Under the pieces are notes generated by a model. The model was given only the letters and a program-made list of their open reading frames with translations. It was not told the DNA's origin and made no database searches. A stretch of DNA of 63,241 nt, the filler included, from Octopus bimaculoides (lineage: Eukaryota): assembly GCF_001194135.2 (NCBI RefSeq). It is 7 parts of 5 records of this genome, joined end to end, with 100 filler letters (N's around TTAATTAATTAA, not from the genome) between each part and the next. Parts side by side here need not be neighbours in the genome. Positions count along the whole stretch, not along the records: positions 1 to 9,845 come from NC_068990.1; 6 more parts are not named here. One strand, written 5' to 3'. Every line of letters begins with the position of its first letter. Within the stretch, counting starts at the first letter, position 1. Of the stretch, positions 1-9,845 are shown one piece after another. The translations under genes were made by a program, and so were the position numbers.

Positions 1-50
<50 letters not shown>
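1..50. repeat. (AGAT)n microsatellite
   Basis: Seen directly; larger (GATA)n tracts also occur at 13328-13455 and 15692-15730. Confidence 0.98.
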
Positions 51-51
<1 letters not shown>

Positions 52-409
52 CGTTTGTAAATTTGTGTTCCTAGATACCTGGTGTGAAACCGTGTGTTAA
101 AACAGATATTGTTATATTTCGGGACGGTCATTTTTTTCTCTCCAAATAAACACACGCACTATATATTCGTTCTTCACTCGTTTATTATTGTTGTTATTTT
201 AACTGATGTCCACTGTCCGCAAATCTTTCGGCACACATATCTAACCTCTTCTGTGACACTTTCCGTCCTCGTGCTGCTCCTGCTTCTCTTAGTCCATTCT
301 GTTTTTGTATCTATATCGGAATTTTACTTTCTTTCTTATTTCCCCCCTCTACTTTGTATTTTGTCCCCTCTGTGTTCAGCCCTGTGTGGCCAATAATGAA
401 ACATATCTT

Positions 410-477
<68 letters not shown>

Positions 478-582
478 CAGACTGAGAGATAGATAGAGAG
501 AAAGATAGATATATATATATCCCAGGGTAGCCCCATAGACCGGTCATATTTATCTTTATCTATCTGTCAATCTATCTATCTA

Positions 583-619
<37 letters not shown>

Positions 620-824
620 TGCAGCACGGAATTTCGTCAGTGAACAGGTCGCGGTCTAAAAGCGACGAAAATAATGGCTTATAAACACCTTCCACGCTGC
701 AATTGTTTTCGTTCCAGCACACGATCTCAGATCAGGTCACTTGCTATGCCTTTCGTATATATGTATGCGTTTGTGCGTGTGCGTGTGTATGTGTGTGTGT
801 GTGTATCTATGTGTTTGTGTCGTT

Positions 825-997
825 TTGTCTGCGTTTGTTCCCCACCACCGCTTAACAGCCGGTGTTGGTTTGTTTTCGTCCCCGTATGATAGCGTTTCGG
901 CAAAGAGAGTTTGATAGAATAAATACCAGGCTTTAAAAAATACTGGAATCAATTCATTCCACTAAAAATCTTTGAAGACGGTGCTCCAGAATGGCTG
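825..997 (+). mobile_element. SINE family A 3'-half fragment, degenerate
   Basis: gtccccgta...ttcggcaaagaga...gatagaataa...ggtgctccagaatggctgca. Confidence 0.7.
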
Positions 998-2657
998 CAC
1001 TCCTCGTATAAGTAAACGCTTGTTTTTGTGGATTCCTTCATAGGAACAGAAATTGCCAGCCGGTTCCAAAGAACTGACTCGGTGCTTATCACTTAGGAGG
1101 CGAAATTACACCGAAACAACGGTTTCTAAGGGTATATTGACATGATTTGAAATGTATTGCGTTATGCTTTTATATTGAAGCTGTTTGACAAATAGAAATG
1201 GATAAGTACCAGATCGAAAAATGATGTAGTCGACATGATTGGTCGAACCCTGGGAAATGGTGCCCAAGCGGGTCAGCATCCCGATGACTAAAAGCAGTTA
1301 AATAGTGTGGAGGCGGGGTGCGTATTGCGTGCGGGCGTGCGAGTGTGTGGCACAAAAGCACATTCCATATAAAACATAGACCATTAATACCTACAGAAAG
1401 CGACTGACGTATACAACCGAAACCAACGCCCCCACACACGCACAATTCCATCACCTCCCAATGTACACAAACGCTATACAACAAATCTGTCAACATCTTT
1501 TTCTAAAGCTTTTTTCATTCTGTATAACAACAACATTTCTCACTAAATTAAGTTATTTCTATTTAGTCCCTTTCTTTTTCTTTCTTCCTAAACTTTCTTC
1601 CTTTTGTTCGGTCTCTTTAGTTTTCTTTATAAATTCATCTTTTCTTTTGTTTGTATTTTGTTGATTATTTGTTTTGTTTTCTATAAAGTGATAATGTCTT
1701 TTCTTTCTTTTCTTTCTTTTCTCCAGTTCTATTTTTGGATAAATTAAGATTCTGAAACCAAACAGTAGTAACAAATTATATTTTATATTCTCCCTCGACT
1801 CTTCACGATTTCTTTTTCCACAAGAGTATTTTTTATTGAACCAAACGTATTTATAATTAGTTTAAATGCAAGTTAAAAATAAATGATTAAAATACAAAAC
1901 CAATTTAGTGCATTTTAAAAATATTACAAAAAATAATGACAGCAATGACAAAATATATTTAAAGAGAATTTTAAAACCGTTTTATTTGTCTGTTACGATG
2001 GAAATGGATAATTCCTTTGATCACCAATCCATTTCGTCTTAAAACCGAATGGCGCCAAACCAAAAGATTTCCAAGCAAGTTCTGCCAAATTACCTGGCCG
2101 TGGTTGGACATAGTAAAGTTAAGCTGAACATAAGTTAGTTACTTAATGTAGTTTACCCCTAGGTCGGCTCGACTTGATCGATACTAAGATAAAAGACAGT
2201 CCAGCTGTCATCACCCGACCCTTATTTGTTTATATTTAGAACTACAGTATGGTTTAAAATTTAATGTAAGACTTACTACCTTTGCTTCTATAACCATCAC
2301 ATATGTATCAATTATTTTTGCATCTTAACCGATGCATTTATCTATCTTCGCATTCTGAAGAGATTTACTTAAGCCAGTAAATCGAAACGATCGTAAACGC
2401 TACCTTCATCTCTGCTTCTTCCTTCTTTGCTATCTAATTAAACTAAAGGCATACCAACGAAAACCACGAGTTTCCCTTTGTTATTTACATCCATTTTCTT
2501 CTCCTATATAACCTAAACTACGGTTTACCAACCGAACCACCTGGTACCGTACAACCTTACAAAAGACTGTACCTACCCAGGTAATAACCAGGAGCGACTT
2601 TGGATTTAATTATCCCTTAGAGGTATTAAAACCCTCTAACTCATACCTATATATATA

Positions 2658-2698
<41 letters not shown>

Positions 2699-4419
2699 NN
2701 NNNNNNNNNNNNNNNNNNNNNNNNNNNNNNNNNNNNNNNNNNNNNNNNNNNNNNNNNNNNNNNNNNNNNNNNNNNNNNNNNNNNNNNNNNNNNNNNNNNN
2801 NNNNNNNNNNNNNNNNNNNNNNNNNNNNNNNNNNNNNNNNNNNNNNNNNNNNNNNNNNNNNNNNNNNNNNNNNNNNNNNNNNNNNNNNNNNNNNNNNNNN
2901 NNNNNNNNNNNNNNNNNNNNNNNNNNNNNNNNNNNNNNNNNNNNNNNNNNNNNNNNNNNNNNNNNNNNNNNNNNNNNNNNNNNNNNNNNNNNNNNNNNNN
3001 NNNNNNNNNNNNNNNNNNNNNNNNNNNNNNNNNNNNNNNNNNNNNNNNNNNNNNNNNNNNNNNNNNNNNNNNNNNNNNNNNNNNNNNNNNNNNNNNNNNN
3101 NNNNNNNNNNNNNNNNNNNNNNNNNNNNNNNNNNNNNNNNNNNNNNNNNNNNNNNNNNNNNNNNNNNNNNNNNNNNNNNNNNNNNNNNNNNNNNNNNNNN
3201 NNNNNNNNNNNNNNNNNNNNNNNNNNNNNNNNNNNNNNNNNNNNNNNNNNNNNNNNNNNNNNNNNNNNNNNNNNNNNNNNNNNNNNNNNNNNNNNNNNNN
3301 NNNNNNNNNNNNNNNNNNNNNNNNNNNNNNNNNNNNNNNNNNNNNNNNNNNNNNNNNNNNNNNNNNNNNNNNNNNNNNNNNNNNNNNATATATATATATA
3401 TATATAATGTATGTATGTGTAAACCCTAGATGAGGGTTCCACAATTCTTTGCTGGCCAAGCCATACAAATGATTTGCTTATAATGGTCAAATATTCGTGC
3501 TGTACATTAGATCTTTCCCTCCATCAAATAAACGTTACCTGGACAGGCGACACGATGTGCTACACGTCAGCTTTCGAAGGGATTCTAGCGCCCTAACCAT
3601 TTGATTCTTCCCGATGTGTACTCATTTCCAGAGACTGGAGAGACTAGATTTAGTTCTTATTGTCTTGGGAACTGGCCAGACGTCGAGGAAATTCCTGAAG
3701 AACAGGTTACTGAATAAACAGAAATAAAATACACTCTATCTCGGCGTTGAGTACTATTTACCTGTTTGGTAGAAACAAACACATACCGCTGTGTGTGTGT
3801 CTGTTTGTGTGTGTCTGTCTGTTTGTGTATGTGTGTGTCTGTTTGTGTGTGTGTTTGTTTGTGTGTGTGTGCGTGTGTGTAGTTGTGTTCGTTTAAGCAT
3901 GCATCTATACAGATACACACGTGCTCACAACTAGAAAAATAAACATGATATTCCTTTGTTAAACTTTCAATTAATTAATTAATTAGACAAAACAAACAAA
4001 TTAGTGAGAGAAGCATATTTAATTGATTCATTATCGGAGTTCTGTACAGATTGTTTATTTGTTTATTTTGTTCTTTGGGATCGGAGCAAATGCTGTTGAT
4101 GGGGGTGGCGAGAATTTTGTTACGTGTGTGTGAGCAGATCTTCGTGTAAGCTTGTGTCCGTTTAGTTGTTTATGCGTAGGAGTTTGTTTGAGGTGGGTCG
4201 GTGGATGTGTGTGTGTGTGTGTGCGTGTACGTGCATGCGCACGCCTGTGATGTGTGTGTGTGTGTGTGCATGTGCATGCGTGCGTGCGTGTGTGTGTTAC
4301 AGGATGAAAAGTGGTGTTCATCTCTTCTCCATCTCAGTTATGAAGCCTCACAGATTGATGATGGGACAGGAAGTTTGGCATTGAATAGAAATCGGTTCAT
4401 TAAAACCATCTGACCAACT

Positions 4420-4772
4420 AATACACCACCACCACTATCACCACCACCACTATCACCACCACCACTATCACCACCACCACTACCACCGCTTCCACCAATG
4501 CCATGAACTCCAACTGAGTGTAAACCACTACCATCTTCCTAATGATTTTCTCTACCACTATTACCGGTGACACAACCATCATCAACGTCACCATAAAGAC
4601 TACCGCCGACACATCAAAAACCACGATCATCATCATCATCATCATCGTCATCCTGGTCGTCGTACAACCGACATTGGCGTTAGGGTTACCAACACCATTA
4701 CAGCAGACACATACCAGAAGCACTACGAACACCAACACCACACGCCACAACTAATACTACAACTACCACCAT

Positions 4773-4807
<35 letters not shown>

Positions 4808-4908
4808 TTGATGATGATGATGATGATGATTATGATGATGATGATGATGACGGTGGTGGTGGTGGATGCGATGATGGTGGTGGTGGTGATGGTGGTGGTG
4901 GTGAGGAC

Positions 4909-4943
<35 letters not shown>

Positions 4944-4968
4944 CAAACAGATAGATCGATAAATAAAT

Positions 4969-5025
<57 letters not shown>
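4420..5025. repeat. Compound tri- and dinucleotide microsatellite cluster (ACC/ACT, GAT, GGT, GT)
   Basis: Seen directly; it produces the poly-T/M/I/V ORFs in the track. Confidence 0.95.
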
Positions 5026-5139
5026 TATGTGCTTGTGTGTATGTGCTTGTGTGTATGTGCGTTGTGTGTGCGCGCGTGTGTCATCATGCAATTATCGAAT
5101 TATGTAAATACATTTACCGTCTTTCCGTTGTGATTGCAG

Positions 5140-5404
5140 GTAGTTTATACATTTATGCTGTGAGTGTTTTCGTTCCCGAACGCTTTGTTACTGCCAACCC
5201 CTTAAGTTTGTCCTTCATAAGAACGGCTTATACAACCAATAACACAAAATGTGGCGTACAAGGAGTCATAATGAGCATCCATCCTCCCCGGGAGAAAGTG
5301 CATCGCTGTTCAAGCAGCATCATCAAAACATTTGGCTGTAGAGGTCAATGTTATTCATACACCGAAATGAACAGTAACCTCACAAGAGTCATTCGTTCCT
5401 GCAG
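5140..5404 (+). CDS. Coding exon of a secreted cystine-knot protein (bursicon-alpha/Norrin-like), N-terminal half of the knot
   Basis: Acceptor ctttccgttgtgattgcAG|5140; open frame ...SLYIYAVSVFVPERFVTANPLSLSFIRTAYTTNNTKCGVQGVIMSIHPPREKVHRCSSSIIKTFGCRGQCYSYTEMNSNLTRVIRSC; contains the CxGxC knot motif; donor TGCAG|GTGACT at 5404/5405 (phase 2). Confidence 0.9.
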
Positions 5405-5442
5405 GTGACTATATACATTATTATTATTATTATTATTATTAT

Positions 5443-5696
5443 GTTTTTTTTTTCTTCTTTCTTCAAATTTTTTCCCATCTCTCGCCGAGTGTTTTCCGTA
5501 CACCTAGGGCAGAGAAACGTTGTATACATTCCCAATTTACACGCGCAAATTCATAGGTAAAACATGTATTTAAGAAAAAAAAAAATCATGAATGGATGTT
5601 GTTTTCACAGCGATAATGCTCTTCTTAGTACATGAGTCGTTCCAGTTAGCACGATTTTTTGCACCTCCTGTAAAGATGGTAAGCCTGGTATCGGCT
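5443..5696 (-). mobile_element. 3' end of an RLE-type non-LTR retrotransposon (R4/Dong/NeSL-like) with (TAA)n tail
   Basis: Minus strand reads IPGLPSLQEVQKIVLTGTTHVLRRALSL*, then a UTR running into (ATT)n at 5417-5442. Confidence 0.7.
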
Positions 5697-6540
5697 TTTG
5701 CTTTGTATTTGTGCAAGTTGACTCCAAATCTCACCCAGCGACCTCAAGAGACAACAAGTTAGAAGTTCAGGTTAGTGTTATGCCTAGGGTGTCATATATT
5801 TGGTTTTGTAAAGAGTATTGTTCTAGAGAATGTCAGTCGAAACAAAAGTAAATTAGAAGTTTGTTTTAAAAGTAATTTGATTATATGATGATTATCTGAT
5901 GTTAAAATGGCCGTAAAAAGTGTTTGCTATTATGTACATTTAAAAGTATTCTGACACTGCTTACAAATTAAGATGTTTGGGGGATTACATAGACAATATT
6001 TTACGTAGGATATGAGCAGTTCCCATGAGCACTATTTATTGAATTTCTTCCATTTTGGGACTTCCGGGAATCATTCCTAAGGCACCTATGACAACAGGTA
6101 TTGTTTTAGTCTTGAGGTTCCAGATTCTGCCAATTTCTATTTCAAGATCTTTATACTTGCTCAAAGTTTTGGTTGGTCTTGACAAAGACATGTCGATTGG
6201 GACAGTCATATCGATGAGGAAGCATGATTTTTGTCTGAAATCCTTCAATATATCTGGCCTATTTGCATCTATCTTTCTGTCAGTTTGAGCAGCATAGTTC
6301 CAAAAGAGTAATATGTGATCATTTTCAAGTACTGGAGGTGATTGAGTTCCCTCTAGTTTTCATCTTGAAGTAGGTCCAAGTCTTTGCAAATTACCCAGTG
6401 AATATACTGTGCAGCTCTATCGTGCCTGAGATACTGGGTAGGTGCAAGAAGGCTGCACAGGGAGACAACATGACCGATGGCTTTTTGGAGTTGGATGACA
6501 TTCTATATAGAGAAATGTAAGTCAAGGTCAGCAAGGCGTA
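5697..6540 (-). mobile_element. 5'-truncated RLE-type LINE: CCHC knuckle remnant, PD-(D/E)xK endonuclease and 3' UTR
   Basis: Frameshifted frames give ...RHDRAAQYIHW..., DANRPDI, KSCFLIDMTVPID, KYKDLEIEIGRIWNLKTKTIPVVIGALGMIP and LMGTAHILRKILSM*. Confidence 0.85.
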
Positions 6541-6754
6541 TCAAAAAAGAACGTGAATGCCTAAATATCTATACCCACTACCGTCGGGTTCACCCATAGT
6601 CTCTCCTGATGGTAAGCGCAATCCTCTGCAGGCTGCTTTCTTCCCTGGTATTGCAACATCTATTATCTTTACTTCATTTTCATTTTTATGGACGACTACT
6701 ATATCTGGTCGTCTCGCCTCTATGACTTGGTCGCACTGCATGTTAAAATCCCAG

Positions 6755-6755
<1 letters not shown>
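6541..6755 (-). mobile_element. Mosaic RLE-LINE fragment (endonuclease piece fused to an RT domain-7 piece)
   Basis: WDFNMQCDQVIEARRPDIVVVHKNENEVKIIDVAIPG followed by CRGLRLPSGETMGEPDGSGYRYLGI. Confidence 0.75.
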
Positions 6756-6813
<58 letters not shown>

Positions 6814-7295
6814 GTTATAAAAACTCACAGCTTATTTTGCTGTGTATAACGGAAAGTGTCAGTTGTCCACAGCCAGCAGACTCAGGTGACACTTGTTTAC
6901 TGGTCATGCTTCAAGAACCCTGCGAAGAATTCTTGCAGCTCCAAGCAATGCTGATTTTTCTAGGTGTTCTACTTTCACACTTCCACCGATCATTTTCAAC
7001 TGTGTTGGCAGTTAAATACTGATACTTCCAAGTGCACCAATTACAATTGGTATCACATCTGCTCTCTTCGTTGACCACAACCTTCGTATTTTCCACTTTA
7101 AATCGCCGTAGTTGTCTATTTTATCTTCTTTCACATTGATCATGTTGCCGGGACATGCTATGTCGATTATCATACATGTTCTTTCTTTATTATTCACCAC
7201 AACAATGTCAGGTTTCCAATGTCTGGTCAGGTAATCACACTGGATCATTACATCCCACGGGATATTGCAGTTCTCATTTTTGGTGACTGTATTTT
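6755..7295 (-). mobile_element. 5'-truncated RLE-type LINE with (TAA)n tail
   Basis: WDVMIQCDYLTRHWKPDIVVVNNKERTCMIIDIACPG...YGDLKWKIRRLW...IPIVIGALGSI...RILRRVLEA*; the tail is (ATT)n at 6755-6812. Confidence 0.85.
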
Positions 7296-7667
7296 ACAAC
7301 ATATATATATATATATGAGTAATGTGTCAATCGATTAGGCCTTTCCTAACGACTCCTTTAATTGATTAATGTAAACCTTACATCATTGTAAAGAAACCGT
7401 TTTCGTCAGATGAATTCATCAACTTCAAAATAAAAGATATTCGAAATGATTTAACATAGCTGGGTCTAATTGTCAACATAAACTGTAAGAATATCAATTA
7501 GTGTGTACTTATGTACCAAGTTAGATATTTACATGATACTGTTGTGTGTGTACATTATTCTGAGCTAACGAGTTGCTCAATTTAAGTAACTAATTCAACT
7601 TGATTTTACTTGTGTGTATGTGTGTGTGTATAGCTTCACATAAAAAATATTATCTTATATTTTCCAG

Positions 7668-7857
7668 TTGTTGCCAAGCAACGGACTTTGGTTTCCAACA
7701 AGCAATAATCAACTGCAAGAACGGTGAAAAAATGCGGAAGATTGTGAAATTTGCCATTAACTGTCATTGTCGACCTTGTGTTTTGAAACCTAGGGTTACA
7801 CTTAAAGATCTGCGCCTCATGCTCAGGATGTCCACCAGAAAACATTGGCCCAACTGA
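7668..7857 (+). CDS. Terminal coding exon of the same cystine-knot gene
   Basis: Acceptor atattttccAG|7668; the phase-2 join gives AG+T=Ser, then CCQATDFGFQQAIINCKNGEKMRKIVKFAINCHCRPCVLKPRVTLKDLRLMLRMSTRKHWPN*. Splicing completes RSCSCCQ and CxCxxC, for 11 Cys in total. Confidence 0.9.
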
Positions 7858-7893
7858 GAGATTGCGGCCAAGTTCTGCGGCTGATCATTGCAC

Positions 7894-7899
7894 AATAAA
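7894..7899 (+). terminator. Candidate polyadenylation signal AATAAA of the cystine-knot gene
   Basis: First AATAAA, 37 nt after the stop codon at 7857; position only, no transcript evidence. Confidence 0.4.
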
Positions 7900-8029
7900 T
7901 ATAGAGATCTCTTTCTAGCTACGGACACACTAACAAACATGCGCAGAGACATACAGACAAATTTCCAATAAGTAAACGCTCGCTCTCGTATTTGCGCACA
8001 TTTAATTCCCAGAGAAACACAGACACGAA

Positions 8030-8090
<61 letters not shown>

Positions 8091-8519
8091 AATTATGTGT
8101 GTAATTATTTTAACAAAATCTCACGCATATTTCTACATATAAGATACTCACACATTGATACACATCGTACACGTACACACACACACACCTAGCAAATCGA
8201 TTCTACACGAAATTTTATTCCCACCGACCAACGCATACCTGTAATTACACAGCCATGGATAGGATATACGCACACGAGCAGACACACAGAGGTAAGGCAT
8301 GGTTAGGTGGACCTTTATATAATTAAACAACAACTTTAATTCCCAAGAATATCATCAAACATTACAACCAACAGCAACTTTGAAAGGCATTGTAGCCACC
8401 ACTTCTCCATGGCAATACTTCTATCACAAACAATAGGCCAACGGTATTTACGAGTAACTTTACAAACACGAACGATTACATCAAGAAACAACAATAAACA
8501 AAGACAATATGATGATAAT

Positions 8520-8522
8520 GGT

Positions 8523-8554
<32 letters not shown>

Positions 8555-9168
8555 AATTTACTACTACTACTGCTACTACTACTACTACTACTACTACTAA
8601 TAATAATAATAATAATAATAATGCAACTACAACTAATAACAGCAGTAGCCACACACTATCAACATCGACACACCACCACAAACAACAGCACAACCACCAA
8701 CACTAACCAGCACCACCTCCCACCGCCCACCGTTACCACCACCTCCTCCAGCACCACTTCCACCACCACCACCACCACTACCACCACCTCCACCATTACC
8801 AACCGCAACACCAATGCAACCAACACCAACAACGGCGCCGAGACTGCCACTACACCACCACCACCACCACTACCATCACGATGCGCAACAGTAAGAGACA
8901 ATAACACCATTAAATTTCTTTAATACCAACAACGTAGACATCTTCAGGACACAGACAAACAACAACAACACCACCACCCCTCCAATGCCACACTACAACG
9001 AATACTTGTATTTACGGCGACACGAAAAACATCACNNNNNNNNNNCTAAGAAATAGAAATTGTTGAACGGCCATCATGAAGGAATAGGAAGTTGTATCAG
9101 AACTACTTGTAAATCACTCCACCATCACTCCCCACCACCCAGTACTGCTGCTGCTGCTGCTGCTGCCC

Positions 9169-9211
<43 letters not shown>

Positions 9212-9480
9212 CACTACTATATTTTAGTCGACCTGCACCCACCCAAGCACATCTGTTAGAACAAACCAGAAGACAAACGACCCTGATTCTCTGTTCCAAA
9301 AAACGAGCTGACAATGACGACGATGTTGATGATGATGATAATGATGATGATGATGATGATGACGACGATGATGACGATGATGACGATGATGATGATGATG
9401 ATGACGACGACAATGACTACGATGATGACGCAACGAACGACGATCATGCTGATACTGATGTTGATCATCATCATCATCAT
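8520..9480. repeat. Compound trinucleotide microsatellites (ACT, AAT, ACC, GAT/GAC)
   Basis: Seen directly. Confidence 0.95.
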
Positions 9481-9785
9481 GTGAAGAAGAATTCCAAACG
9501 GTTTCTTCCATGTTGTATAATTTCTTTCTTTAATTCTTTCTTCTGTTATTTTTTTTCCTATTAAATTTTGATTTTCTTTCTGCACGGAGTGAAGAATCGA
9601 ACCTTTGAAACCAGTAAACAAAACCAACAGCAGTTGGCAAGGAATTTATTGGGTTAAGCTGGGGGTGGGAGGGGGACGGTGATCAAACAACTTCTCTCTT
9701 CTTTCTTTCTCAATCATATTCTTTCTCTCGTCTGCTCTTTCAATCGCCTACACTCTCCATCTTTCTCTTCTCTCCTTTTCTCACT

Positions 9786-9845
<60 letters not shown>

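What the first reader, a model, noticed from the sequence alone, without database searches (positions are those of the whole stretch)
5140..7857. Divergent 11-Cys cystine-knot hormone-like gene with both bursicon-alpha and Norrin features
Seen: two exons splice in frame (phase 2, GT-AG) to give C-x18-C-x9-C-RGQ-C-x16-C-S-CC-x13-C-x15-C-H-C-RP-C, a basic tail (VLKPRVTLKDLRLMLRMSTRKHWPN) and two N-glycosylation sequons (NNT, NLT). Established: 11 Cys with CxGxC, CxCC and CxCxxC define bursicon subunits and Norrin. The motifs CxSY, RSCxCCQ and CRPC are bursicon-alpha-like. The SIxxP..CSS stretch, the 15-residue C8-C9 spacing and CHC match Norrin as I recall it. The strongly conserved bursicon-alpha signature (PVIHVLQYPGC.PKPIPSFAC) is absent. 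Inference: this is not canonical bursicon-alpha but a separate paralog, possibly an undescribed cephalopod or mollusc ligand for a type-B LGR (rickets/LGR4-like) or a Frizzled receptor.
Basis: partly seen in the sequence, partly recalled or inferred. Interest (0 to 1): 0.85.

Follow-up and report, generated by a model that had tools for sequence, protein, structure and literature searches.

The report
Octopus bursicon-alpha-like hormone gene, already annotated
These two exons are the last two of three coding exons of the Octopus bimaculoides gene that RefSeq already calls "bursicon"; it belongs to a distinct, old bursicon-alpha-like branch shared by molluscs, annelids and ribbon worms, and is not a Norrin relative or an undescribed cephalopod ligand.

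Summary
Window 5140-5404 and 7668-7857 splice GT-AG in phase 2 and give exactly the 11-Cys pattern, basic tail and two sequons reported. It is incomplete: the product is 100% identical to residues 12-161 of XP_014770796.1 "bursicon [Octopus bimaculoides]". The first coding exon (MRLPMAILLT|G) lies 22.1 kb upstream of 5140, outside the window.

The protein is not a canonical bursicon-alpha. It belongs to a well separated lophotrochozoan subfamily, here called x18, defined by:
- C1-x18-C2 with an invariant PP;
- C8-x14/15-C9;
- CxCRPC;
- a conserved C-terminal LRxLL helix;
- an intron between C5 and xCC.

Members occur in cephalopods, gastropods, a chiton, annelids and nemerteans. Several are already named: Charonia and Biomphalaria "bursicon alpha", Urechis "bursicon-A2". 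Capitella, Lineus longissimus and Elysia marginata each also carry a canonical C1-x13-C2 alpha, so the two types are paralogs.

The Norrin-like residues (CSS, CHC) vary within the family. The x15 spacing is generic to CTCK domains.

"Undescribed", "cephalopod or mollusc specific" and "Norrin features" are not.

I could not determine whether octopus also has a canonical alpha or a beta subunit. The receptor is unknown. The gene is already known, and interest is modest.

The parts
5117..5139 (+). Polypyrimidine tract and splice acceptor (AG at 5138-5139) of the intron of about 22.1 kb that separates coding exon 1 (outside the window) from coding exon 2
   Evidence: Sequence ...ccgtctttccgttgtgattgcag|GT. 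The RefSeq protein continues upstream as MRLPMAILLT|G. That exon was found at L001 10001-10031, followed by GTAAGT.
5140..5404 (+). Coding exon 2 (phase 2). It encodes the end of the signal peptide, a low-confidence linker with the NNT sequon, and the cystine-knot domain from C1 (TGT 5250-5252) to C5 (TGC 5400-5402). This stretch includes the x18 C1-C2 loop (SIHPP...), CRGQC and the NLT sequon.
   Evidence: Translation. 100% identical to P0001/XP_014770796.1. The x18 HMM hits this ORF at 50.9 bits.
5405..7667 (+). Intron (GT 5405-5406, AG 7666-7667) that splits the C5-x-CC motif after the second base of the Ser99 codon. It contains an (ATT)n microsatellite and decayed repeat-derived ORFs on the minus strand.
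   Evidence: Other x18 genes show the same intron position: fragment predictions P0048, P0052 and P0054 end '...CR', and P0024, P0029, P0030, P0053 and P0067 start just before 'CC'. The knot domain is uninterrupted in the canonical alpha genes examined.
7668..7857 (+). Coding exon 3. It encodes C6-C11 of the knot (CC 7669-7674; C11 TGT 7777-7779), the 25-residue basic tail VLKPRVTLKDLRLMLRMSTRKHWPN (7780-7854) and the stop TGA (7855-7857).
   Evidence: The x18 HMM scores 44.2 bits on this ORF. The tail is predicted helical for residues 144-155 and is conserved as D(I/M)xxLRxLL across the family.
7894..7899 (+). AATAAA hexamer 37 nt after the stop codon; a possible polyadenylation signal
   Evidence: Read directly from the sequence. 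No transcript evidence was examined.

Best explanation
Window 5140-7857 holds coding exons 2 and 3 of the three-exon Octopus bimaculoides gene annotated 'bursicon' (XP_014770796.1, chromosome CM046610.1).

The 161-residue precursor has four parts: a signal peptide, a short disordered linker, one CTCK/DAN-type cystine-knot domain with 11 Cys, and a basic C-terminal helix.

It is the cephalopod member of a lophotrochozoan subfamily of bursicon-alpha-like proteins (x18 type). The subfamily is marked by C1-x18-C2 with an invariant PP, C8-x14/15-C9, CxCRPC and an LRxLL tail. It is paralogous to canonical bursicon-alpha.

Inferred mechanism (not shown here): it is secreted from peptidergic neurons as a glycosylated, disulfide-linked dimer. 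The odd 11th Cys and the CTCK fold suggest this. The partner would be itself or a bursicon-beta-type subunit. It would signal through a type-B leucine-rich-repeat GPCR of the rickets/LGR4-6 class, as arthropod bursicon does.
For: Identity:
- 100% identity and coverage to P0001 'bursicon [Octopus bimaculoides]'.
- The window maps to L001 27000-36845, with exon 1 at L001 10001-10031.

Family:
- An exhaustive profile search separates a tight group at E 3e-24 to 4e-14 from all other cystine-knot proteins at E >= 9e-9.
- All members of the group share the x18/x15 spacing and the tail motif.
- They come from gastropods, annelids and nemerteans, plus a chiton and Capitella.
- Octopus scores 109.8 bits against the x18 HMM built without cephalopods. 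It scores 55.6 bits against canonical alpha and 7.4 bits against beta.
- In leave-one-out tests all 15 x18 and all 44 x13 sequences prefer their own family.
- x18 is monophyletic in the NJ tree, in 248 of 500 bootstraps, with the diagnostic 5-residue insertion trimmed out. It sits next to canonical alpha.
- hhalign x18 against canonical alpha: probability 99.6%.

Paralogy:
- Elysia marginata has P0017 (x18) and P0089 (x13).
- Lineus longissimus has .65108 (x18) and .39370 (x13).
- Capitella has CapteP217220 (x18) and ELT93240 (x13).

Fold:
- The knot core of the AF2 model has pLDDT 94-97.
- The best PDB matches are Norrin, C. elegans LGR ligand alpha2/beta5, Gremlin, NBL1, FSH and VWF-CK.

Expression context from the literature:
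- A 'PEP-Burs' neuron type in the O. vulgaris paralarval brain (PMC9712504).
- Urechis bursicon-A2 is up-regulated around larval settlement (PMC7737342).
- Arthropod bursicon is an alpha/beta heterodimer that activates LGR2 (established knowledge, as cited in PMC4079206).
Against: - No receptor, dimer partner or bioactivity is known for any x18-type protein, so the mechanism is by analogy only.
- I could not show that octopus has a bursicon-beta or a canonical alpha. The last word-indexed search returned only 19 hits, none cephalopod, and did not even recover many of its own query sequences, so it is uninformative.
- Bootstrap support for x18 monophyly is only about 50% on an 88-column alignment.
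- Mollusc monophyly within x18 is weak (38 of 500).
- It is not verified that the 'burs' marker of PMC9712504 is this gene.
- The Pfam DAN match (20.9 bits, cut-off 22) leaves a BMP-antagonist-like activity formally open.
Confidence: 0.8

Rival explanations
1. It is simply THE bursicon alpha subunit of cephalopods. Under this reading cephalopods kept only the x18 copy, which pairs with bursicon-beta and activates the rickets-type LGR. Functionally it would then be ordinary bursicon despite the unusual loop lengths.
For: - RefSeq names it bursicon. Gastropod surveys that reported one alpha (Charonia, Biomphalaria) reported this type.
- No cephalopod x13 alpha appeared among the hits whose taxon I could identify.
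- It shares the alpha-specific spacings C2-x9-C3 and C7-x13-C8, and CxCRPC.
Against: - Absence of a cephalopod x13 alpha is not established. Most of the 87 representatives have no taxon label, and one search was insensitive.
- Where genomes were checked, both types coexist (Elysia marginata, Capitella, Lineus). This argues for distinct, retained functions.
Confidence: 0.35
2. It is a Norrin-type ligand that acts on Frizzled-4/LRP (or LGR4) rather than as a bursicon subunit.
For: - The best Foldseek PDB hits are Norrin (E 3e-6, TM 0.6), including the Norrin-LGR4 complex.
- There is a local SI.HP..CSS resemblance, and the C8-x15-C9 spacing is shared.
Against: - The PDB holds no arthropod bursicon, so Norrin ranks first by default. 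VWF-CK, Gremlin, NBL1 and FSH also match.
- Identity to Norrin is 23%, against 35% to an insect alpha.
- CSS and CHC are not conserved within the family.
- Norrin spacings (C1-x15-C2, C4-x23-C5, CxCEEC) are not met.
- 0 of 500 bootstraps join x18 with Norrin.
- A separate Norrin-like protein exists in Tubulanus.
Confidence: 0.03
3. It is a DAN-family BMP antagonist rather than a hormone subunit.
For: - Pfam DAN at E 3.7e-4.
- One family member is auto-named NBL1 (Elysia marginata).
- Profile hits to NBL1 and Gremlin in the PDB.
Against: - The DAN score is below Pfam's cut-off (20.9 against 22), and Cys_knot scores higher.
- The nearest relatives by a wide margin are bursicon alphas.
- The CxCRPC and RSCxCCQ signatures are of bursicon-alpha type.
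Confidence: 0.07
4. The exons are the C-terminal CTCK domain of a larger mucin-, VWF- or Slit-like protein, or a pseudogene fragment.
For: Exon 5140 begins at an acceptor, so something lies upstream. CTCK domains of large proteins have the same 11-Cys framework.
Against: - The upstream exon encodes only MRLPMAILLT|G with an ATG and forms a signal peptide.
- All orthologs are single-domain proteins of 148-208 residues. One gene model is 253 residues.
- The frame is intact and conserved across cephalopods.
Confidence: 0.01

Closest known systems
x18-type lophotrochozoan bursicon-alpha-like proteins, already deposited under several names: Charonia tritonis 'bursicon-alpha precursor' AQS80491.1; Biomphalaria glabrata 'Bursicon alpha' XP_013089160/KAI8793169; Urechis unicinctus 'bursicon-A2' QUP51993.1; Lineus longissimus XP_064648490; Capitella CapteP217220
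   Same: - Identical Cys spacing: x18, x9, xGx, x16-18, x, x13, x14-15, x, RP.
- Invariant PP in the C1-C2 loop.
- GCRGxCxSY, RSCSCC and VKFAxxCxCRPC motifs, and the LRxLL tail.
- 25-38% overall identity.
- 110 bits against the family HMM built without cephalopods.
   Different: - Cephalopod sequences have CSS/CQP after the loop, a shorter pre-domain linker and the NNT sequon before C1.
- The mid-loop NxT sequon is shared with molluscs, but not with annelids or nemerteans.
Canonical bursicon alpha (Burs; arthropod cuticle-tanning hormone subunit, with x13-type orthologs in echinoderms, annelids, molluscs and nemerteans)
   Same: - 11-Cys CTCK framework.
- C2-x9-C3, C7-x13-C8 and CxCRPC.
- SY after C4 and R/ERSCxCCQ.
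- Single-domain secreted precursor.
- hhalign probability 99.6%.
   Different: - The C1-C2 loop has 18 residues, not 13, and lacks the PVIHVLxxPGC/PKPIPSFAC signature.
- The C8-C9 loop has 15 residues, not 17-23.
- The C-terminal tail differs.
- x18 genes have an intron inside C-x-CC. The canonical genes inspected have an uninterrupted knot exon.
- Both types coexist in single species, so they are paralogs.
Norrin (NDP)
   Same: - CTCK fold with 11 Cys.
- C2-x9-C3, C7-x13-C8 and C8-x15-C9.
- Top Foldseek hits.
- Norrin also binds a type-B LGR (LGR4; PDB 9khh).
   Different: - 23% identity.
- C1-x15-C2, C4-x23-C5 and CxCEEC.
- It never groups with x18 in trees.
Bursicon beta (partner of bursicon)
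   Same: Same superfamily and 11-Cys count. It is the presumed dimer partner.
   Different: - C2-x8-C3.
- CEGxC.
- C-terminal CxC(F/S/V)xC.
- The HMM score is only 7.4 bits.
VWF/mucin C-terminal cystine-knot (CTCK) domains and DAN-family BMP antagonists (NBL1, Gremlin)
   Same: Same fold. The profile E-values against the PDB are 1e-8 to 1e-7, and the C8-x15-C9 spacing is shared with VWF-CK.
   Different: These are multidomain proteins or BMP antagonists. None has the CRPC terminus or the alpha-type motifs.

Membership tests
CTCK / cystine-knot hormone superfamily (Pfam PF00007 Cys_knot) | CxGxC ... CxC knot with the 11-Cys CTCK framework, scoring above the Pfam gathering threshold | tested here: met
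   28.6 bits against a cut-off of 24. The Cys pattern was measured. The AF2 knot core has pLDDT 94-97, with Foldseek matches to Norrin, the C. elegans alpha2/beta5 LGR ligand, Gremlin, NBL1, FSH and VWF-CK.
x18-type lophotrochozoan bursicon-alpha-like subfamily | C1-x18-C2 with invariant PP; C8-x14/15-C9; CxCRPC | tested here: met
   Octopus spacing is 18/9/RGQ/16/S/13/15/H/RP. All 15 family members have x18, and all but one have x14-15.
x18-type lophotrochozoan bursicon-alpha-like subfamily | Higher score against the subfamily profile than against any other cystine-knot profile, with the query's own clade left out | tested here: met
   109.8 bits (x18 without cephalopods) against 55.6 (x13 alpha), 62.8 (other single-domain CTCK) and 7.4 (beta). 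The leave-one-out test holds for every member.
x18-type lophotrochozoan bursicon-alpha-like subfamily | Conserved C-terminal tail, D(I/M/L)xxLRxLL, predicted helical | tested here: met
   Octopus has TLKDLRLMLRMS. L151 is invariant in alignment A3. The AF2 model has a helix at residues 144-155.
x18-type lophotrochozoan bursicon-alpha-like subfamily | Phase-2 intron between C5 and xCC | tested here: met
   In octopus the junction is 5404|7668. Read-through fragment predictions from other x18 genes stop or start at the same point. The taxa of those fragments are unknown.
Canonical bursicon alpha (Burs) | Alpha-type framework: C2-x9-C3, C7-x13-C8, CxCRPC | tested here: met
Canonical bursicon alpha (Burs) | C1-x13-C2 with a (P)xIHxL/I..xxC N-terminal strand, and a C8-C9 loop of 17-23 residues | tested here: not met
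   Octopus has x18 and x15. The canonical sequences in the tree set have x13 and x14-23, all but one x17-23, once the regex's choice of an earlier Cys is corrected.
Canonical bursicon alpha (Burs) | One-to-one orthology with arthropod Burs (single alpha-type gene per genome) | tested here: not met
   x18 and x13 genes coexist in Elysia marginata, Lineus longissimus and Capitella. For octopus itself the presence of an x13 gene could not be tested.
Canonical bursicon alpha (Burs) | Forms a heterodimer with bursicon beta and activates the LGR2/rickets-type receptor | not testable with these tools
   This needs recombinant co-expression and receptor assays. No octopus beta sequence was recovered.
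Norrin (NDP) | Norrin spacing (C1-x15-C2, C4-x23-C5, CxCEEC) and closest sequence affinity to NDP | tested here: not met
   23% identity and 35 bits, using the human NDP sequence written from memory. A PDB Norrin chain was hit at E 4.9e-4, no better than VWF or NBL1. 0 of 500 bootstraps join x18 with Norrin.
Norrin (NDP) | Frizzled-4 CRD / LRP5/6 binding surface | not tested
   No residue-level comparison or binding assay was done.
Bursicon beta (Pburs) | C2-x8-C3, CEGxC, and a terminal CxCxxC without RP | tested here: not met
   7.4 bits against the beta HMM. Spacing is shown.
DAN-family BMP antagonists (Pfam PF03045) | Score above the Pfam DAN gathering threshold | tested here: inconclusive
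   20.9 bits against a cut-off of 22. The decapodiform ortholog carries a precomputed PF03045 hit. Many true bursicon alphas also carry PF03045, so the hit does not discriminate.
Multidomain CTCK proteins (VWF, mucins, Slit) | CTCK as the C-terminal domain of a large multidomain protein | tested here: not met
   The precursor is 161 residues with its own ATG and signal-peptide exon. No other cystine-knot exon lies within 10 kb upstream or downstream of the gene.

The most novel reading that the evidence does not exclude
The x18 clade is a third, functionally independent bursicon-family hormone of Lophotrochozoa, retained alongside canonical alpha and beta since before the mollusc-annelid-nemertean split. 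It would have its own dimerisation mode (for example a homodimer stabilised by the conserved C-terminal helix). It would also have its own receptor specificity, either a distinct type-B LGR paralog or a non-LGR target. In cephalopods it may be the only alpha-type ligand left and would define the 'PEP-Burs' neurons.
Probability: 0.3. Interest if true: 0.6.

Novelty: already known. Interest (0 to 1): 0.27.

Why it matters
The gene is already annotated and is ordinary for genome annotation. The useful outcome is a classification point. What mollusc and annelid surveys variously call "bursicon alpha", "bursicon-like", "bursicon-A2", "NBL1" or "CTCK domain-containing protein" is one coherent paralog group. 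It can be recognised by loop lengths, a tail motif and an intron position, and it is distinct from the canonical alpha that several of the same species also have.

The physiological role of bursicon outside arthropods is unknown. An octopus brain neuron type is defined by 'burs' expression. Knowing which alpha-type gene is meant, and whether it pairs with beta, therefore matters for receptor deorphanisation in lophotrochozoans.

Tried and rejected
- I searched the window for the first exon (MRLPMAILLT) by six-frame and degenerate regex. It is absent. I found it in the fetched locus instead.
- I tried to settle whether octopus has a canonical x13 alpha. A profile of 50 canonical alphas returned a list swamped by arthropods, showing 120 of 180 hits.
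- A lophotrochozoan-only profile returned just 19 hits, none cephalopod, and missed many of its own query sequences.
- I looked up contigs of untyped representatives P0038, P0069, P0039 and P0021. They came from an ENA metagenome-type assembly, a JGI vent metagenome, assembly GCA_905397895.1 (a mussel, as I recall) and a Logan run. None could be tied to a cephalopod.
- Literature and supplement searches for cephalopod bursicon sequences found none. They covered PMC6425005, PMC6660194, PMC9712504, PMC5996578, PMC4200219 and PMC4772807. The relevant FASTA supplements were truncated when stored.
- Pfam on the intronic minus-strand ORFs gave nothing meaningful.
- The first bootstrap attempt with Biopython timed out. 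I redid it with my own NJ code.
- Rejected: Norrin affinity, a beta subunit, and a CTCK tail of a larger protein. Reasons are given under the rival explanations.
Full report
**1. The observation**

I read window 5000-8000 and translated the two proposed exons.
- Exon 5140-5404 is preceded by ...ttgtgattgcag and ends TGC AG|gtgact.
- Exon 7668-7857 is preceded by ttatcttatattttccag and ends CCC AAC TGA.
- Joined in frame 2 they give a 150-residue open frame.
- Its cysteine spacing is C-x18-C-x9-C-RGQ-C-x16-C-S-CC-x13-C-x15-C-H-C-RP-C, followed by 25 residues (regex).
- Pfam Cys_knot matches above threshold (28.6 bits against 24). DAN matches just below threshold (20.9 against 22).

**2. What the gene is**

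- A protein search finds a 161-residue protein that is 100% identical over the whole query. It is named "bursicon [Octopus bimaculoides]", XP_014770796.1.
- The same cluster holds "bursicon-like [Octopus sinensis]" and an O. vulgaris protein.
- A second cluster at 60% identity holds a Sepia (Acanthosepion) pharaonis protein and cephalopod-like transcript contigs.
- The RefSeq protein starts MRLPMAILLTG before SLYIY. These 11 residues are not encoded in the window.
- The gene's locus (L001, chromosome CM046610.1 of GCA_001194135.2) shows the window is L001 27000-36845. ATGCGATTGCCAATGGCTATACTTTTAACAG|GTAAGT sits at L001 10001-10031, 22.1 kb upstream of 5140.
The missing exon supplies the start codon and most of the signal peptide.
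- No other cystine-knot exon lies within 10 kb upstream or downstream of the gene.

**3. Which kind of cystine-knot protein**

An exhaustive HMMER search of 1.84 billion cluster representatives used a profile of the two cephalopod sequences. It gave 87 hits with a clear break:
- eleven representatives at E 3e-24 to 4e-14;
- everything else at E >= 9e-9.

The tight group shares the following features:
- C1-x18-C2 with an invariant PP;
- GCRGxCxSY and RSCSCC;
- C8-x14/15-C9, with one gene model at x19;
- VKFAxxCxCRPC;
- a tail with D(I/M)xxLRxLL.

Sequences below the break include typical bursicon alphas. They have C1-x13-C2, C8-x17-23-C9, and in arthropods PVIHVLQYPGC.PKPIPSFAC.

Cluster look-ups name the tight group:
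- Urechis unicinctus "bursicon-A2";
- Owenia, Littorina and Patella proteins;
- Charonia tritonis "bursicon-alpha precursor";
- Haliotis and Batillaria proteins;
- Biomphalaria "Bursicon alpha";
- Tubulanus and Lineus proteins;
- Elysia marginata, auto-named NBL1.

The supplement of PMC6425005 adds Capitella CapteP217220 and the chiton Acanthochitona. I call this the x18 type.

**4. Ortholog or paralog of canonical alpha**

Three species carry both types:
- Elysia marginata: P0017 (x18) and P0089 "bursicon" (x13).
- Lineus longissimus.65108 (x18) and .39370 (x13).
- Capitella teleta: CapteP217220 (x18) and ELT93240 (x13).

So the two types are paralogs that predate the mollusc-annelid-nemertean split.

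Profile tests agree:
- Octopus scores 109.8 bits against an x18 HMM built without cephalopods. It scores 55.6 against a 44-sequence canonical-alpha HMM and 7.4 against a beta HMM.
- In leave-one-out tests all 15 x18 and all 44 x13 sequences prefer their own family. Echinoderm alphas show the smallest margins.
- An NJ tree on 88 trimmed columns, with the diagnostic 5-residue insertion removed, recovers x18 as a clade next to canonical alpha in 248 of 500 bootstraps. Cephalopods are a clade in 473 of 500, and beta in 495 of 500.
- hhalign of the two alpha-type profiles gives 99.6% probability, so they are close relatives.

Gene structure also differs:
- x18 genes have a phase-2 intron between C5 and xCC. 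This is seen in octopus and in read-through fragment predictions from other genomes.
- The knot domain of the canonical genes I inspected is one exon: Elysia marginata at L003 10950-11390, P0038 and P0039.

**5. The Norrin idea**

- The PDB holds no arthropod bursicon. Sequence and profile searches hit VWF-CK, Norrin, NBL1, Gremlin and the C. elegans LGR ligand at similar weak levels.
- The AlphaFold model has mean pLDDT 74.6. The knot core is at 94-97, the signal helix spans residues 5-20, the linker 21-43 is disordered, and the tail helix spans 144-155.
- That model matches Norrin best (E 3e-6, TM about 0.6). It is followed closely by the C. elegans alpha2/beta5 ligand, Gremlin, NBL1, FSH and VWF-CK. 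This is a fold-level match.
- BLASTP gives 23% identity to human Norrin, whose sequence I wrote from memory. It gives 35% identity to an insect alpha.
CSS is CQP in decapodiforms. CHC is CSC, CIC, CQC, CAC, CYC or CNC elsewhere.
- The x15 loop is also the VWF-CK spacing.
- x18 never joined Norrin in 500 bootstraps. Norrin instead paired with a different nemertean protein (Tubulanus .17866) that looks truly Norrin-like.
- Norrin homologs outside vertebrates are already reported (PMC4079206).

**6. How it probably works**

Shown:
- It is a secretory precursor with one glycosylatable CTCK domain and an odd (11th) cysteine.
- It is conserved from chitons to octopus and in annelids and nemerteans.

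From the literature:
- Arthropod bursicon is an alpha/beta heterodimer acting on LGR2/rickets (cited in PMC4079206 and PMC5996578).
- Bursicon roles outside arthropods are unknown (PMC4772807).
- An O. vulgaris paralarval brain cell type is defined by 'burs' (PMC9712504).
- Urechis bursicon-A2 rises around larval settlement (PMC7737342).

Inferred:
- The octopus protein is a neuroendocrine, disulfide-linked dimeric ligand of a type-B LGR.
- Whether it pairs with beta, with itself or with a canonical alpha is open.
- I could not establish whether octopus has a beta or an x13 alpha.

**7. Novelty and verdict**

- The gene is annotated and named. Its orthologs appear in published neuropeptide surveys under bursicon names.
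- The papers I read do not say explicitly that these sequences form a separate, ancient paralog group with diagnostic loop lengths, tail and intron. PMC5996578, for example, attributes two alphas to duplication in some bivalves. Platynereis "A-2" is a different, x13-type duplicate.
- That is a modest classification point, not a new kind of system.
- I rate the finding as already known, with interest about 0.27.
- The most novel reading not excluded is that x18 is a functionally independent third bursicon-family hormone with its own receptor. I give this about 0.3 probability.

Noticed in passing
window 6036-6248, 6541-6828, 7012-7248 (all minus strand, inside the intron): Three ORF fragments share PDIVVV..IID(V/I)A(I/C)PG ... 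KY.DL..EI..W.....IP(V/I)VIGALG.I. They look like decayed copies of one interspersed repeat or retroelement-like family. Pfam gives no meaningful match.
   Followed up: partly
window 2699-3387 and throughout 1-9845: There is a 689-N assembly gap flanked by (TA)n. Microsatellite density is very high: (TG)n at 4972-5081 just upstream of the exon, (TGA)n at 4773-4943, (ATT)n at 6755-6813, (AC)n at 8017-8087 and others. Many long 'ORFs' in the window are translations of these repeats.
   Followed up: partly
window 7894-7899: An AATAAA hexamer lies 37 nt downstream of the stop codon. It may be the poly(A) signal, which would imply a very short 3' UTR. No transcript data were checked.
   Followed up: no
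Supplement of PMC6425005: TubulanusPolymorphus.17866 (not in the window): This nemertean protein (CQRHYYVQKVVHPKKDC...ATYRFIDRCACRPC) resembles Norrin (CMRHHYVDSISHPLYKC...ATYRYILSCHCEEC). It pairs with human Norrin in the NJ tree. Lophotrochozoans therefore appear to have a separate Norrin-type gene.
   Followed up: partly
P0219 and P0225 (Elysia chlorotica EGW08_014831/014832, same 319,745-bp contig): Two consecutively numbered canonical (x13) bursicon-alpha genes lie on the same contig. This looks like a local tandem duplication distinct from the x18/x13 split.
   Followed up: no
L003 10950-11390; L002 3001-3480; L005 2001-2480: The canonical alpha genes inspected encode the whole knot domain in one exon. 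x18 genes are split between C5 and xCC. This gene-structure difference tracks the two paralog groups.
   Followed up: partly
P0027, P0031, P0034, P0076 and P0046, P0077, P0085 (representative-search hits, taxa unknown): These are further single-domain 11-Cys proteins. Several end exactly at CxCRPC or CxCGPC with no tail; others end CxC(Q/T)PC with a tail of 12-22 residues. All carry CSCC(Q/A)P- or CxCC(K/R)P-type motifs. They form groups outside both alpha types in the NJ tree, and octopus scores 62.8 bits against their joint HMM. Their identity is unresolved.
   Followed up: no
(leave-one-out HMM margins): Echinoderm bursicon alphas (Antedon, Acanthaster, P0033, P0042) have the smallest preference for the x13 profile over the x18 profile. 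This suggests they retain ancestral features shared with x18.
   Followed up: no
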